A program made the position numbers and the translations under genes. The notes under the pieces are model-generated. The model was not told the origin of the DNA. It was given only the letters and a program-made list of their open reading frames with translations, and made no database searches. A stretch of 64,000 nt of DNA from Dimorphilus gyrociliatus (Eukaryota; Animalia; Annelida). The DNA is taken from the NCBI GenBank assembly GCA_904063045.1, contig CAJFCJ010000004.1, forward strand, positions 1,853,713 through 1,917,712, in the 5' to 3' direction. This document shows, piece by piece, positions 20,906 to 27,279 of the stretch (positions are counted from its first letter, which is position 1; each line of letters begins with the position of its first letter).

Positions 20906-22614
20906 TTAACTATAGTCGTCCTTAAACTTCTCCATTTTTTTCAGATAATCGACGTCTGCTATTGGTTTTAGTTTGTTTAGAATTTTTAGCATATCACTCA
21001 AAGTTACTGCAGGTACTAATAATTCATTTTCTGAAATTTGCATAAAGGACATTTCTATGGCTTCTGGAACTTCAGGACTGCATGGAGTCAACAGATCTAC
21101 AATCTGCTCTTTGTTAGTAGGTGATGGTCCACTTACTGTTCTAAAATGTGTTGCATCTCGTACTTTATAAACTGGTTGTAAGCAAGCTTCACGTGTAATT
21201 TGATGTATCTCAGCTGCAGAAAATCCTTCAGTCTTTTCTCCTAAAGTTTTAAAATCGTCTTCATGTAACTCATTAACAGAATTCTCCATGTATAATTTAA
21301 ACAAAGTAGTACGAGCATCTTCCTCTGGTAATTGAATATGTATACGCTTTGTAAAATATTTGAGGACACGATAATCTAAAGTCCACGGAGTGTTTGTCGA
21401 TCCTATAACCCATACTCCATCACTTTCATGCCAATGTATACTTATTTGACATAGAATTTCAGTTTTTAACTTTCTTGCATGCTCATTATTGTCTTCATTG
21501 GAAAATAGGAAATCAATAGCTTCTAACAATATTATACTAGGTTTCCTTGCACTAGCCATTCTAAAGGTGTCTTTGATCACTTTTAAACCCTCTCCGTGCC
21601 ATTTACATATCTGAATATATATTACAAATATTCCAATTAAAATTACAAAAATACAATAATTTTATAAAATTACCAGATCAGCAGACGATATTGAAAAGAA
21701 ATTAGAACTATTTGCTTCAGTTGCAACAGCTTTCGCTAAGTATGACTTTCCAGTTCCAGGTGGTCCAAATAATAAAGTGCATTTCCCAGGTAGTTTTGTA
21801 CCAGTAAATAAATTTGGGAACTTTATAGGCAGAAGAACACTTTCTTTCAGAGCTTGTTTGGCTGCTTCTAAACCAATAACTTTATCCCATGGTACATTAC
21901 AACTTTCAAAAACAATTTCTTTTTGAAGTTGTGGATTGATTTCTCTCTTATCCGATTCTTTCTTATTGTCGTTGCTTATTAGATGATGTTATAATAAGAA
22001 AAAGAGTTGAAATTATAAAAGAACTATTACCTTTGATTATCCTTTTCATTTTTAATCAAATCGGCTTTCAGTTTCTCAGCTCTGTTGAGATATTGTAAAA
22101 CTTTTGCTCTAACCTGACTTTTGACTGCTTGATTTGTTAGTTCGTCTTGAAAAATTTGTATATTTTTTTAATTATTATAATGATTTTATATATAAAGAAA
22201 TATTAAGAAAATCTTACATTTTAAAGCATTTAAAAAACATTGAAGTCCATTTTTATATAATTTGAAAGCTTCCTCAAAGTTTTCTGCATAATCTTCTTCA
22301 ATTGCTTGTTTTAAATAAGTAATTCCTTTCTGAAAATGATGAATATTTGTTATTTTACATCTTTTTATAAGATTAAATGATTTACTTTGAGGGAGGGTGT
22401 CACCAAACCGGTTTCCTTCTAAAAAATATATACATTTATTTGTTTAAGCGTTCTAACAATTTTAATATACAAAGAGATTTACCTCTACAAAAGGTATTAT
22501 GGCAGCTTCATCCTGATGGTTTCATAAATTTTATACTCTCTATATCTTATACAAATGGATACTCACTCCGATAGAAGGTTCTTCTACAGTTAGTTCTTCA
22601 TTGGAGCCCGTCAT
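20906..22614 (-). CDS. VPS4 paralogue C: MIT plus AAA domain, Walker B and Arg-finger degenerate
   Basis: Intact spliced ORF (exons ~22567-22614, 22484-22513, 22220-22331, 22031-22153, 21675-21976, 20906-21610). [16 protein letters not shown]...YLNRAEKLK; Walker A GPPGTGKS; Walker B ILLEAID; LDYRVLKYF replaces LDAAIRRRF. Confidence 0.85.
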
Positions 22615-22902
22615 ATTTTAAAATGTTGCCTACTATTTCTATGGGATTTACTGCGAGTCTTTCATGTTGTAATAAGGATTCTCCCTATTAGTCACTTACA
22701 CGAGAAGAGTGAGATTTACTCATAAATCAAATATCTAGGGTTGGTTCGATTGTGAAAATATTAATTATTAATCTTATCAAAAATCAGATATTATTACGAA
22801 ATAACCTTAAACACCATAAAATATATGATTCTTTACATTATTAAAGTATTGTTTTCTCAGTTATCATTCAAACAAAAAAGTAGTTCAAACAAAACTATAA
22901 CG

Positions 22903-24123: not shown

Positions 24124-25195
24124 CTTATTGTGTGCATATAAAGCCAGATTAGTTATGTTTCCATTTCAGATTAGTGTAGCATGGTCGCTGAGGAATATAA
24201 TTTCGCAAGACAAATCAGTTATACATGAGTCATGATCATGTGATGTCAACAAAATCTATTTACTGGCAAAAACCATTCAAGAAAGGGTTTATTTTTAAAA
24301 GTTTAGATTGTAGATAAAAGCAAAAAAATAACATAATTTCATTAACTAATACTAATATTCTAATTTATTAATTTTTCAAGATAAATAGAAGCTCTTATTA
24401 CTTTCAACTTTGTTTACTTATTCTTTATATAAATTAAAATTTTTACTATTTATTGTTAGTTAGAGTGTAATAACTAGTTAGTTAATGAAGTATATCTTAT
24501 GCCATTTTTGTGGTCGTACCCTTATTTACTTTTAAATTTTAAATGATTTACAATTCATACTCAAGTATGATTTATATGCTCTCTCATTTTCCCCCATTTC
24601 GTATGAAAAATTATAGTGAGGATTTATCAAAAGAGTAGAAAATGAATCATAGTCACATGAATAGTGAATAAATTACGCACGAAATTCCGGTTCAAAATGA
24701 CAAAATGAGAAGAGATAAGATAGTAACTCTTCAATGACTAATACTTGAATTAGTAATTAAAATATAATGGGAATAGGTATTCGCCTATTTAAAAGTAATT
24801 AAATTATAAAACAAACAAGGAAATAGCAATTAACTATGAAGTTAATTAGTTGGAAACCAATTGTTTATTATTTTCAATCTGTAATAAATATAACTTAATT
24901 TTAGAAAACTATAAAAACAGAAGAATAAATTTCGTATCAATTAAAGCTTTACATATATACTGTCTATATTTATATAAATTTATATATATATTTATATACT
25001 TACGATGTAATTGAACTAAAGTATGAACAAGTTTTATTTTCCTTACTTCAACTTCATACGGAAATGAAGCAGCTACTCTTTACATACAATTTAAAAAATA
25101 TTGAATAAATCATTCATGGTTAAAACGAAATAAAATATATAATTTTTATGTTTTATTTTTGAGAGTAAATATTAAGCAGTTTGTTTCCGCTGATT

Positions 25196-27279
25196 TTAAC
25201 CTTCCTGGCCAAAATCATCAGTGAACTTTTGCAGCTTTTTAAGATCTTCCTCGTTTACTGTTGGTTTCTGTACTTCTAGAGATTTAATCATGTCATTCAT
25301 TGTTACTGGTGGTTCTAATAATTTATCTCCTGGAACTTCCATCCAGCTCATTTCCTTTGCTCCTGGAGCACCAGGACTGCAGGGTGTTAAAAGATCATCT
25401 ACAACAAGGTCTTTGTTGTTAGGAGATGGCCCTTTGACTTTTCTAAAATGAGTTGCTGTCTGAACTTTTCGTACTGGTTGCATGAGGGCGTCACGTACAA
25501 CTAATGATATATCAGCTCCGGAATATCCTTCACTCCGTTCTCCTAAAGCTTTAAAATCTTCATGTTTTAATTGCGTCACAGTATTACCAATGTGTAAGGT
25601 AAACATAGTAGTACGGGCGCCGGCCTCGGGTAAAGGAATATATATACGCTTCTCAAAACGTCTTCTAATAGCTGCATCTAAAACCCATGGAATATTTGTC
25701 GCTCCTAAAACTAGAACTCCATCATTATTGTTTCCGACACCCTGCATTTGGACTAAAAATTCCGTTTTTATCCTTCTTGCAGATTCAGACTCATTTTCAC
25801 TTCTAGCGGAGCATAATGAATCAACTTCATCTATGAATATTATACTAGGTTTGTTTTCTCTAGCCATTTCAAAGAGATTTTTTACAAGCTTCTCACTCTC
25901 TCCTAACCATTTTGAAACCTAAAAATTTTTAATTAGTATACTTGGAATAGGTAAAATTACTGTGAAAATGTTATCCTTACCAAATCAGATGATGAGACTG
26001 AAAAGAAAGTAGAATTATTTGCTTCAGTTGCAACAGCTTTCGCTAAGTATGACTTTCCAGTTCCTGGTGGTCCAAATAATAAAATACCCTTCCAAGGTGT
26101 TCTTTTTCCGGTGAACAAATGAGGGAATTTTATAGGCAATATAACAGCTTCTTTCAAAGCTTCTTTAGCTGCTTCTAAGCCAGCTACATCATCCCATAGG
26201 ACATTGGGCTTTTCCATTACAATTGCCCCTTGGAGTTGGGATTGAAATTTCTTTTTTTCAGGTTCTTCCTCGCTGTCACTGCTGGTGAATTATAAAAATA
26301 GATTATGCAGGGAAAAAGAAATGAAAGAAGAAGCGTTACTTTTTATCGTTCGTGCTTCCATCCTTAACCGGTTTCTTTTTATCACTTCCATCATTATTCA
26401 AATAGGCTTTTAATTTTTCAGCCCTTTCCAAATATTGAACACATTTAGCTCTGATACTTTCTTTTGCTTTTTCGCTATGTGCTTCATCTGAAAAAGTATT
26501 TGAACATTTCCGTAATTATAATTGCCTTTTCAATATATTTAAGAAACAGTTACATTTTATAGCATGTAAGAAATATTCAACACCGTGTTCATACAGTCTT
26601 AAGGCTTCGCTATAGTTTTTTGCACGATCTTCGTCAGTTGCTTTTGTGACCAAATCAATTCCTTTCTAAAAAAGTAAAATTTTTAAATATCTTGCACTAA
26701 TCATACAATCTTTACCTGCAAATAAGGCGCCACGGCAATATAATTTTTACTGAAGACAGTCATTGTCTTAAACTATTACTTTCGATATCTCAGCGGCTCT
26801 GCAAATGCATAAGCCTGACAGCTTTTATATAATCAGATTCCTATTAGTCATTTTCATATGAAAACTGAGGGTTACTCATAAAGATAAACTAGACCTTTAA
26901 GGTTGGTTTGTATTGTGAAATTCCAGGGATGTTAACATTGACGAATGTCCTTTGGATTCGCGGTGTTATAGATAACCAACCTCATACCCGTACGATTCGA
27001 AATATGATCAAATTTAGGTCATTTTATTTTAATATTGTGAATATATCTTTATTTTTAATATTATCTAAGACATTGATTTAGTACATGATCGAAAAACTTG
27101 AAAGTTTAGTGAAACTTTTCAACAACTGTACATTGGTACTAAGAATAATTGTAATCCGCTGAGGCAAGTAAATATACTCTATCTTGTAATTTTATATGTT
27201 TAAATCTACCGGTAACATTTTTTCACAAGTTTTAATACGTAATGGTAATGTATTTTTATACCTGTAACTTTGATGCCAT
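25196..27279 (-). CDS. VPS4: Canonical VPS4 AAA-ATPase
   Basis: Exon 1 MASKLQ (27262-27279); [16 protein letters not shown]...; GPPGTGKS; [11 protein letters not shown]; IFIDEVDSL; GATNIPW; [10 protein letters not shown]; C-terminus FTDDFGQEG. Confidence 0.96.

What the first reader, a model, noticed from the sequence alone, without database searches (positions are those of the whole stretch)
20906..27279. VPS4 triplet: one canonical ATPase plus two intact, complementary 'broken' paralogues, a candidate endogenous ESCRT brake or antiviral system
Seen: three tandem minus-strand VPS4 genes with shared intron positions and uninterrupted frames. Copy A (25196-27279) is canonical. Copy C (20906-22614) keeps a MIT domain, Walker A (GPPGTGKS) and the pore-loop Trp, but Walker B IFIDEVD becomes ILLEAID and the Arg-finger IRRRF becomes VLKYF. 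Copy B (22903-24123) has deleted the MIT exons and changed pore loop SKWLGE to TGQASD, Walker B DE to DD and sensor-1 ATN to ACG, but keeps the beta-domain. Established: Walker-B Glu mutants (yeast E233Q, human VPS4A E228Q) are dominant negatives that trap ESCRT-III and block enveloped-virus budding; the beta-domain binds Vta1/LIP5; retroCHMP3 is a precedent for duplicated ESCRT genes used as restriction factors. Inference: C is a natural substrate trap or hexamer poison and B a Vta1 sink or hetero-hexamer modulator, tuning ESCRT in particular tissues or on infection.
Basis: partly seen in the sequence, partly recalled or inferred. Interest (0 to 1): 0.88.

Follow-up and report, generated by a model that had tools for sequence, protein, structure and literature searches.

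The report
Dead VPS4 copies beside live VPS4
In the tiny marine worm Dimorphilus gyrociliatus, the essential membrane-remodelling motor VPS4 sits next to two intact extra copies that have lost their ATP-burning residues yet are kept as genes, so they may be natural regulators of the motor, though their function is untested.

Summary
The window is Dimorphilus gyrociliatus (annelid). It carries three tandem minus-strand VPS4 genes, annotated DgyrCDS3064 (A), 3063 (B) and 3062 (C). Intron positions are shared and the frames are open.

Corrections:
- A starts at 26763, not 27279.
- C has seven exons.
- B keeps a Walker A consensus and two arginine fingers.
- C's perfect Walker A lies in a roughly 90-nt gene-conversion tract shared with A.

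New findings:
- C is a young copy of this species' own A (dS about 0.7, against saturated A orthologues). All 143 assignable amino-acid changes since the split fell on C and none on A.
- B is older than C.
- Two related worms carry similar dead paralogues at the same place.
- An open frame in C is very unlikely under neutral drift (P at most 7e-6), and change avoids family-invariant columns.
- Both B and C model as VPS4 folds.

So B and C are retained pseudo-ATPases, not pseudogenes. Acting as brakes or modulators of VPS4 is plausible but untested. I found no evidence for an antiviral role and could not reach any expression data.

The parts
25196..26763 (-). Copy A = DgyrCDS3064, canonical VPS4 (443 aa). 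Five exons: 26763-26716, 26665-26554, 26487-26340, 26281-25981, 25918-25196. Walker A 26050-26073, pore loop 25898-25915, Walker B 25820-25843, sensor-1 25685-25705, Arg fingers 25655-25672.
   Evidence: It is 77-80% identical to VPS4 of other animals, and dN/dS is 0.03 against the L003 orthologue.
27262..27279 (-). Doubtful.
   Evidence: One search shows the ATG and the GT. The annotated exon 1 at 26763-26716 is the one conserved in L003. The 596-nt intron this exon would need is about ten times the local norm.
22903..24123 (-). Copy B = DgyrCDS3063 (350 aa), a MIT-less pseudo-ATPase. Three exons: 24123-24094, 24031-23729, 23622-22903. Walker A consensus kept (23798-23821). Pore loop without aromatic residue (23602-23619). 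Walker B DD (23524-23547). Sensor-1 Asn lost (23389-23409). First two Arg fingers kept (23359-23376). Beta-domain and C-terminal helix kept.
   Evidence: AF2 model pLDDT 86 with best fold matches to VPS4B/Vps4.
20906..22614 (-). Copy C = DgyrCDS3062 (447 aa), a full-length pseudo-ATPase with a MIT domain. Seven exons: 22614-22567, 22512-22483, 22418-22386, 22329-22218, 22145-22031, 21974-21674, 21610-20906. Walker A intact (21743-21766). Pore loop KWH (21590-21607). Walker B EA (21512-21535). Sensor-1 Asn kept (21383-21403). Arg fingers lost (21353-21370).
   Evidence: AF2 model pLDDT 89 with best fold matches to VPS4B/Vps4.
25999..26088 (-). Gene-conversion tract, arm in A (Walker A region of exon 4).
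   Evidence: 91-98% nucleotide identity to C, against a 69% background. Only 1 difference in the 66 nt that encode a run of 22 identical residues.
21692..21781 (-). Gene-conversion tract, arm in C (Walker A region of exon 6 of the seven-exon model).
   Evidence: Same evidence as the arm in A. The two exons align without gaps at a constant offset of 4307 nt.

Best explanation
B and C are tandem duplicates of the worm's single canonical VPS4 gene (A). They are kept as expressed-type, intact protein-coding genes, but they have become pseudo-ATPases: the VPS4 fold and its interaction modules are retained and the hydrolysis residues are gone.

Ages:
- B is old. Its synonymous sites are saturated against everything, and a B-like pair of reading frames lies at the same place in a related worm.
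- C is young. It descends from, or was overwritten by, this species' own A after the split from the L003 relative, and it still exchanges a short tract with A.

After the A/C split, every assignable amino-acid change fell on C.

Likely mode of action: both act without catalysis through the surfaces they keep.
- C keeps the MIT domain, the pore-loop Lys-Trp, the beta-domain and the C-terminal helix.
- B keeps the beta-domain, the arginine fingers and a P-loop.
Through these they would enter or cap VPS4 rings, or compete for ESCRT-III tails and the Vta1/LIP5 cofactor, and so damp or tune ESCRT-III disassembly by A.

Shown: gene structures, motif states, fold, open-frame maintenance, relative ages, rate asymmetry, and synteny in relatives.
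Inferred: catalytic inactivity, co-assembly or competition, and the direction of the effect.
For: - Identity and structure of the genes.
- The Walker B Glu is replaced in B, in C and in paralogue X of L003 (column 269).
- The fold is retained: B has pLDDT 86 and TM 0.86-0.90 to VPS4B; C has pLDDT 89 and TM 0.89-0.94.
- The open frame of C is not neutral. P(no stop) is at most 7e-6 even at a third of the measured synonymous divergence, before counting splice sites and indels.
- Substitutions avoid family-invariant columns: C keeps 64% of invariant against 42% of variable columns (p 4e-5); B 43% against 22% (p 3e-5); X 53% against 18% (p 2e-11).
- C is young. pS for A-C is 0.46 [0.39-0.53], against 0.70 for A versus the L003 orthologue. 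C's third codon positions match D. gyrociliatus A only at 85 sites and L003 A only at 36 (p 1e-5). In exon 5 alone the counts are 56 and 25 (p 8e-4). B serves as the control, at 45 and 53.
- Rate asymmetry: 143 changes on C and 0 on A.
- Relatives carry the same layout: L003 has A, X, furin; the ERR14224705 contig has MerB, A', B', X', furin.
- The beta-domain is the best-kept module in both B and C.
- Established mechanism: Walker B drives hydrolysis; the pore-loop Trp holds the substrate; the arginine fingers contact the neighbour's ATP; the beta-domain binds Vta1; MIT binds ESCRT-III (PMC6393862). The Glu-to-Gln mutant forms ATP-bound hexamers (PMC5520056).
Against: - No expression data could be reached. 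The paper's expression table is not among the held supplements. The sequence collections hold no D. gyrociliatus transcript even for A (member count 1).
- Pairwise dN/dS for A-C is 0.46. Because A barely changed, the value on C's branch must be higher, perhaps 0.6-0.9. That is compatible with strongly relaxed constraint.
- C has no orthologue in any searched collection. L003 has no B and no relic of it.
- C's Walker A may be a by-product of gene conversion.
- Loss of the arginine fingers could weaken C's docking to a neighbouring subunit.
- The AF2 models were built with canonical VPS4 in the alignment, so they lean towards that fold.
- The NJ grouping of B, C and X (99%) conflicts with C's young age and is probably long-branch attraction.
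- No interaction of any kind was tested.
Confidence: 0.5

Rival explanations
1. B and C are duplicates on their way to being lost. Constraint is simply relaxed, the catalytic residues fell by drift, and the proteins do nothing useful even if they are transcribed.
For: - dN/dS is high (0.46 for A-C; about 0.3 or unmeasurable for B).
- Every hydrolysis motif is hit.
- C is lineage-specific, with no orthologue.
- L003 lacks B.
- At a neutral divergence of about 0.25 per site, the expected amino-acid identity (55%) is close to C's observed 52%.
Against: - The frames are open and all splice sites are intact, although 12-31 stops would be expected.
- Change is concentrated away from family-invariant columns.
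- B-like and X-like genes persist in relatives whose synonymous sites are saturated.
- The predicted folds are confident.
Confidence: 0.15
2. They have taken on new roles outside the canonical ESCRT cycle, working as ATP-binding or nucleotide-free scaffolds in a particular tissue or sex (for example the germ line). Fast evolution would then be typical of reproductive genes.
For: - Divergence is extremely asymmetric (143 against 0).
- C has a new N-terminal extension built from two mini-exons.
- B lost the MIT recruiting domain altogether.
- Short VPS4-like proteins of unknown role exist in mosquitoes and a rotifer.
Against: - The modules that are kept best (beta-domain, MIT in C, C-terminal helix) are the ones that tie VPS4 to its known partners.
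- There are no expression data either way.
Confidence: 0.2
3. They are positive partners, as with 'prozyme' pseudoenzymes. B in particular would donate its arginine fingers to a neighbouring A subunit, or help ring assembly, and so raise or redirect A's activity rather than braking it.
For: - B and X keep the first two arginines and a P-loop, while losing their own Walker B Glu and sensor-1.
- Catalytically dead paralogues that activate the live enzyme are documented in other families (PMC5201418 and PMC3663545, listed).
Against: - In a ring that hands substrate from subunit to subunit (PMC6393862), a subunit without a pore-loop aromatic residue and without hydrolysis should interrupt translocation rather than help it.
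- C has no arginine fingers.
Confidence: 0.1

Closest known systems
Canonical VPS4 / SKD1 (VPS4A, VPS4B, yeast Vps4)
   Same: Same family and fold, with the same MIT, linker, AAA, beta-domain and C-helix layout (C), the same intron positions as the neighbouring canonical gene, and best fold and sequence matches in PDB.
   Different: B and C lack the Walker B Glu. C also lacks the Walker B Asp and both arginine fingers. B lacks the MIT domain, the pore-loop aromatic residue and the sensor-1 Asn. Both evolve many times faster than A.
Laboratory dominant-negative VPS4 (Walker B Glu-to-Gln mutants)
   Same: A P-loop is present and the catalytic Glu is absent, so a hydrolysis-dead subunit is expected. 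The mutant is known to form ATP-bound hexamers (PMC5520056). That it acts as a dominant negative is established knowledge from my own memory, not retrieved here.
   Different: The natural copies carry many further changes (about 48% of C and 65% of B differ from A). C has no arginine fingers, and B has no MIT or pore loop. Whether they enter rings is unknown.
retroCHMP3 (duplicated, truncated ESCRT-III gene that blocks virus budding)
   Same: A duplicated gene of the ESCRT pathway that has been altered so it could interfere with the pathway. Origin is recurrent: C arose separately from B and X.
   Different: retroCHMP3 is an intron-less retrocopy of an ESCRT-III subunit in mammals, with a demonstrated antiviral effect (bioRxiv 10.1101/2020.08.30.273656 and 10.1101/2021.04.27.441704). 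Here the copies are intron-bearing tandem copies of the ATPase in an annelid, with no functional data.
Pseudoenzyme partners of live paralogues (trypanosomatid AdoMetDC and DHS 'prozymes')
   Same: A catalytically dead paralogue retained next to the active enzyme, in a protein that works as an oligomer (papers listed).
   Different: Those partners activate the enzyme and their hetero-oligomers are demonstrated. Here neither the sign of the effect nor any oligomer is known.
Short VPS4-like proteins annotated in Aedes aegypti, Sabethes, Armigeres, Brachionus plicatilis and Barthelona
   Same: About 310-340 aa and MIT-less like B, with Walker B DD or DQ and altered arginine fingers.
   Different: These lineages are unrelated and the events look independent. 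Similarity to B, C or X is no higher than to canonical VPS4. The Brachionus gene is not next to a VPS4 gene. I found no literature on them.

Membership tests
VPS4 (meiotic-clade AAA ATPase) | N-terminal MIT domain | tested here: inconclusive
   Met in A and C (Pfam MIT on the exon pieces and on the annotated proteins). Not met in B: exon 1 is spliced directly to the linker/AAA exon and no relic is present.
VPS4 (meiotic-clade AAA ATPase) | AAA cassette with a Walker A P-loop | tested here: met
   The GxxGxGK[ST] pattern is present in A, B and C. In C it lies inside a gene-conversion tract.
VPS4 (meiotic-clade AAA ATPase) | Walker B Asp-Glu | tested here: not met
   A has DE, B has DD and C has EA. 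So B and C are members by descent and fold, not by catalytic signature.
VPS4 (meiotic-clade AAA ATPase) | Pore loop 1 Lys-Trp-hydrophobic | tested here: inconclusive
   A has KWL. C has KWH (Lys-Trp kept, third position changed). B has GQA (lost).
VPS4 (meiotic-clade AAA ATPase) | Second-region-of-homology arginine fingers | tested here: inconclusive
   A has RRR. B has RRK (first two kept). C has LKY (lost).
VPS4 (meiotic-clade AAA ATPase) | Beta-domain insert and C-terminal helix (Pfam Vps4_C) | tested here: met
   Vps4_C E-values are 2e-30 (A), 1e-14 (C) and 3e-12 (B). Two beta-strands are modelled at the expected place. It is the best-conserved module in B and C.
VPS4 (meiotic-clade AAA ATPase) | Overall fold matches solved VPS4 | tested here: met
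   The Foldseek top hits are 1xwi, 2zan, 3eih, 6ap1 and 5uie, with target TM 0.85-0.94. The models were built with canonical homologues in the alignment.
VPS4 (meiotic-clade AAA ATPase) | ATP hydrolysis and ESCRT-III disassembly | not testable with these tools
   Loss of activity is predicted from the motif states only.
Pseudoenzyme (retained dead paralogue) | Enzyme fold kept, catalytic residues lost, gene under selection | tested here: met
   Fold. Motifs. Open-frame probability at most 7e-6 and non-uniform substitution. Persistence in relatives.
Dominant-negative-type VPS4 (works like) | Binds ATP, does not hydrolyse, co-assembles with wild type, and holds ESCRT-III | not testable with these tools
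   Only the sequence prerequisites can be read. A P-loop is present and the Glu is absent in both. The arginine fingers are absent in C, and the MIT domain and pore loop are absent in B.
retroCHMP3-like ESCRT-derived restriction factor | Retrocopy origin (intron-less, dispersed) | tested here: not met
   B and C keep the parental introns and lie in tandem with A.
retroCHMP3-like ESCRT-derived restriction factor | Inhibits budding of enveloped viruses while sparing the host | not testable with these tools
   No data. The functional test lies outside what this report may propose.

The most novel reading that the evidence does not exclude
Dinophilid worms repeatedly give birth to hydrolysis-dead VPS4 copies (B and X are old, C is recent) because a host-encoded, tunable brake on the ESCRT ATPase is advantageous against parasites that hijack ESCRT, such as enveloped viruses. 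That would be the ATPase-level counterpart of retroCHMP3. The fast, one-sided evolution of the copies would then reflect conflict rather than relaxed constraint.
Probability: 0.08. Interest if true: 0.9.

Novelty: new variant of a known kind. Interest (0 to 1): 0.6.

Why it matters
VPS4 is the only enzyme of the core ESCRT machinery, and it is normally under extreme constraint. Here A is about 80% identical to vertebrate VPS4B, with dN/dS 0.03. Engineered hydrolysis-dead VPS4 is the classic tool for shutting the pathway down.

A natural locus keeps dead copies beside the live gene. It has kept them across worms whose synonymous sites are saturated, and it made a new one recently. Such a locus would show how an animal can regulate or buffer an essential ring ATPase with its own pseudo-subunits.

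It also offers a dated series (young C, old B and X) for following how a AAA ATPase loses catalysis while keeping its partner surfaces. The same kind of short dead VPS4 is annotated, unstudied, in mosquitoes and a rotifer, so the theme may be wider. Without expression or interaction data, the biological role remains open.

Tried and rejected
- The word-indexed protein search with B's large exon returned only B itself. This says little, because even canonical VPS4 was missed. No exhaustive search could be run for B, since the single representatives job went to C.
- DNA of the ERR14224705 contig, which carries the full triplet, could not be fetched. B' and X' are therefore known only as reading-frame lengths and Pfam marks, and orthologue dN/dS for B could not be computed.
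- The species behind SRR23372228 (L003) could not be identified, and Rfam found nothing on L003.
- The genome paper's held supplements contain none of the three gene ids, VPS4 or MerB.
- Relaxed tblastn found no relic of MIT exons near B, no extra VPS4 fragments in the spacers, and no B relic in L003.
- I first took X of L003 for C's orthologue because both abut the furin gene. I rejected that because C's synonymous sites follow D. gyrociliatus A.
- I considered patchy gene conversion as the cause of the low A-C dS. Only one tract stands out, and pS is even across exons (0.44-0.47). Older, decayed conversion cannot be excluded.
- I discount the NJ clustering of B, C and X as probable long-branch attraction.
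- Another failed because it wrongly assumed a single extra exon in C. Both were redone.
- P0107, a 231-aa candidate for B', proved unrelated to B.

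
Full report
**Source and identity.**
The window is AT-rich (about 30% G+C) and has short introns. 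An exact look-up of the intronless MerB reading frame placed it on contig CAJFCJ010000004.1 of Dimorphilus gyrociliatus, GCA_904063045.1. D. gyrociliatus is a meiobenthic annelid with a 73.8-Mb genome (PMC7854359).

The record annotates three adjacent genes on the minus strand of the window:
- DgyrCDS3064: copy A, 443 aa, protein P0151.
- DgyrCDS3063: copy B, 350 aa, protein P0001.
- DgyrCDS3062: copy C, 447 aa, protein P0002.

They are flanked by a furin-like convertase on one side and by MerB and RPL44 on the other.

**Checking the observation.**
- Pfam finds MIT, AAA, AAA_lid_3 and Vps4_C in the exon pieces. A's last exon aligns end to end with solved VPS4B (E 3e-111).
- I derived exon models from the sequence. 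They reproduce the annotated lengths exactly, with GT/AG at every junction.
- A and C share three intron positions in identical phases. B shares the phase-0 intron just before the pore loop.
- B's 10-codon first exon ends in the same two residues as A's first exon and is joined straight to the linker/AAA exon. No trace of MIT exons lies in its 62-nt intron or in the spacers.

Corrections:
- A's first exon is 26763-26716. It is annotated and is conserved in a related worm. The exon at 27279 is not supported.
- C has two additional mini-exons with canonical splice sites. Such exons are unlikely to be predicted without transcript evidence (my inference). The annotation pipeline gave transcript alignments ten times the weight of other evidence.
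- B also keeps a P-loop consensus and two of the three arginines.

**Are there relatives elsewhere?**
- An exhaustive HMMER scan with C's last exon found nothing between C itself (525 bits) and canonical VPS4 (209 bits).
- At 90% clustering, C's best non-self hit is its neighbour A (52% identity), just ahead of VPS4 from other animals.
- Searching with A found two close relatives on long Logan contigs.
- L003 (run SRR23372228; A-orthologue 92-94% identical) carries, in order, a BTB/BACK gene, A, one divergent paralogue that I call X, furin and PRP39.
- X consists of a MIT reading frame plus a 345-aa reading frame. It has an intact P-loop, pore loop KWV, Walker B DD, no sensor-1 Asn, and the first two arginines.
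- A 9.9-kb contig from a Tara Pacific coral long-read metagenome (ERR14224705) carries MerB, A', a split AAA gene (102 aa plus 231 aa, like B's two large exons), a MIT piece plus a 345-aa gene (like X), and furin. Its DNA could not be fetched.
- So a canonical VPS4 followed by one or two degenerate copies is a conserved layout in this group of worms.

**Ages.**
- Nei-Gojobori counts were made exon by exon and pooled only as counts.
- A versus the L003 orthologue: pS 0.70 (saturated), dN/dS 0.03.
- A versus B: pS 0.75 (saturated).
- A versus C: pS 0.46 [0.39-0.53], dS 0.72, dN 0.33, dN/dS 0.46, and pS is even across exons.
- A three-way count that does not depend on distance correction agrees. 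At third codon positions C matches D. gyrociliatus A alone at 85 sites and L003 A alone at 36 (p 1e-5). B, the internal control for composition, gives 45 and 53, and X gives 57 and 42.
- Exon 5 alone gives 56 against 25 (p 8e-4).
- C therefore descends from, or was wholly overwritten by, this species' own A after the split from L003. It is not X's orthologue, despite lying in the same position.
- B and C also share with the dinophilid A proteins a Pro where seven other animals have Arg (column 405).
- The NJ tree's B+C+X clade (99%) is best read as long-branch attraction.
- One 90-nt tract around Walker A is 91-98% identical between A and C, against a 69% background, with a single difference in 22 codons. 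This points to recent gene conversion, so C's perfect P-loop is weak evidence for selection on ATP binding.

**Are B and C under selection?**
- By parsimony, with the two other A orthologues as the outgroup state, 143 amino-acid changes fall on C and none on A since their split.
- I ran a neutral model using base frequencies from the local introns and spacers. It expects 12-31 stop codons in C's 425 whole codons. P(no stop) runs from 7e-6 at 0.15 substitutions per site down to 4e-14 at 0.72, before counting splice sites and indels.
- Substitutions are not spread evenly. C keeps 64% of the columns that are invariant in ten canonical sequences but only 42% of the variable ones. B keeps 43% against 22%, and X 53% against 18% (p 4e-5, 3e-5 and 2e-11).
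- By module, the beta-domain is the best kept. C is 62% identical to A there, about as close as Lingula VPS4 is to A. B keeps 18 of 28 invariant columns there, against 45% in the large ATPase domain.
- AF2 models are confident (pLDDT 86 and 89). Their best PDB matches are VPS4B and yeast Vps4. Canonical homologues in the input alignment favour this outcome.
- Together this shows retained, fast-evolving proteins rather than pseudogenes. It does not separate strongly relaxed constraint from diversifying selection.

**Mechanism.**
Established knowledge (PMC6393862; PMC5520056):
- Walker A binds ATP and Walker B drives hydrolysis.
- Pore-loop Trp residues of neighbouring subunits clasp the ESCRT-III chain.
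- Arginine fingers contact the neighbour's ATP.
- The beta-domain binds Vta1/LIP5, and MIT binds ESCRT-III tails.
- The Walker B Glu-to-Gln protein forms ATP-bound hexamers. That it is dominant negative in cells is my own knowledge.

Reading the copies against this:
- C could still be recruited (MIT) and could still hold substrate (Lys-Trp). It could neither hydrolyse its own ATP nor trigger its neighbour's.
- B could not be recruited or grip substrate by itself, but it could bind Vta1 and present arginines to a neighbour.

The most economical reading is that both work through A's ring or A's partners, as caps, poisons, spacers or sinks. Whether the net effect is braking, which I think most likely, or assistance is inference. 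Nothing bears on viruses.

**Comparison and novelty.**
- I found no paper describing natural hydrolysis-dead VPS4 paralogues.
- retroCHMP3 is a real precedent for a duplicated ESCRT gene that interferes with the pathway. However, it is a retrocopy of an ESCRT-III subunit.
- In the hit list for C, many VPS4-like proteins carry degenerate motifs. Named examples are short, MIT-less proteins of Aedes aegypti, Sabethes, Armigeres, Brachionus plicatilis and Barthelona.
- So the kind exists in databases, unstudied. This locus adds tandem layout, conservation across relatives and a dated recent birth.

Whole-protein work used the database's own annotated proteins, returned by the tools (P0151, P0001, P0002). 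X was used as its separate reading frames.
- P0004, a vertebrate VPS4B-like cluster representative, was printed once. After that it was only part of bulk comparisons of all fetched proteins.
All motifs cited here come from tool outputs.

Noticed in passing
window 27939-28634 (+): An intronless 231-aa alkylmercury-lyase (MerB) gene sits in an annelid genome (Pfam E 7e-32). It is annotated in the assembly. A 231-aa MerB lies at the same place beside VPS4 in the ERR14224705 relative, but L003 has a BTB/BACK gene there instead. It is a candidate for horizontal acquisition.
   Followed up: partly
L003 7021-8208 and 10013-11050: In the related worm, the A-orthologue has exons 3-5 fused into one 395-aa reading frame, and X likewise has no introns there. 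D. gyrociliatus A and C, and B for one of them, keep these introns. Whether introns were lost in one lineage or gained in the other is unresolved.
   Followed up: partly
proteins P0005, P0006, P0012, P0138, P0099: Short (313-341 aa), MIT-less VPS4-like proteins with Walker B DD, DQ or EE and altered arginine fingers are annotated in Aedes aegypti, Sabethes cyaneus, Armigeres subalbatus, Brachionus plicatilis and Barthelona sp. The Brachionus gene is not beside a VPS4 gene (L004).
   Followed up: partly
protein P0003: A 631-aa protein of unknown source has a canonical VPS4 cassette preceded by a second, degenerate AAA domain in place of MIT.
   Followed up: no
window 10255-11980 (-): The only G+C-rich stretch of the window (0.41) is a KH-domain protein gene with a long Gln/Ala-rich low-complexity tail.
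   Followed up: partly
window 33310-33381 (+): A single tRNA gene, the only Rfam match in the window.
   Followed up: no
window 17986-20361 (+): A furin-like proprotein convertase (S8 pro-domain, Peptidase_S8, P-domain; 700 aa annotated) is the conserved downstream neighbour of the last VPS4 paralogue in all three worms.
   Followed up: partly
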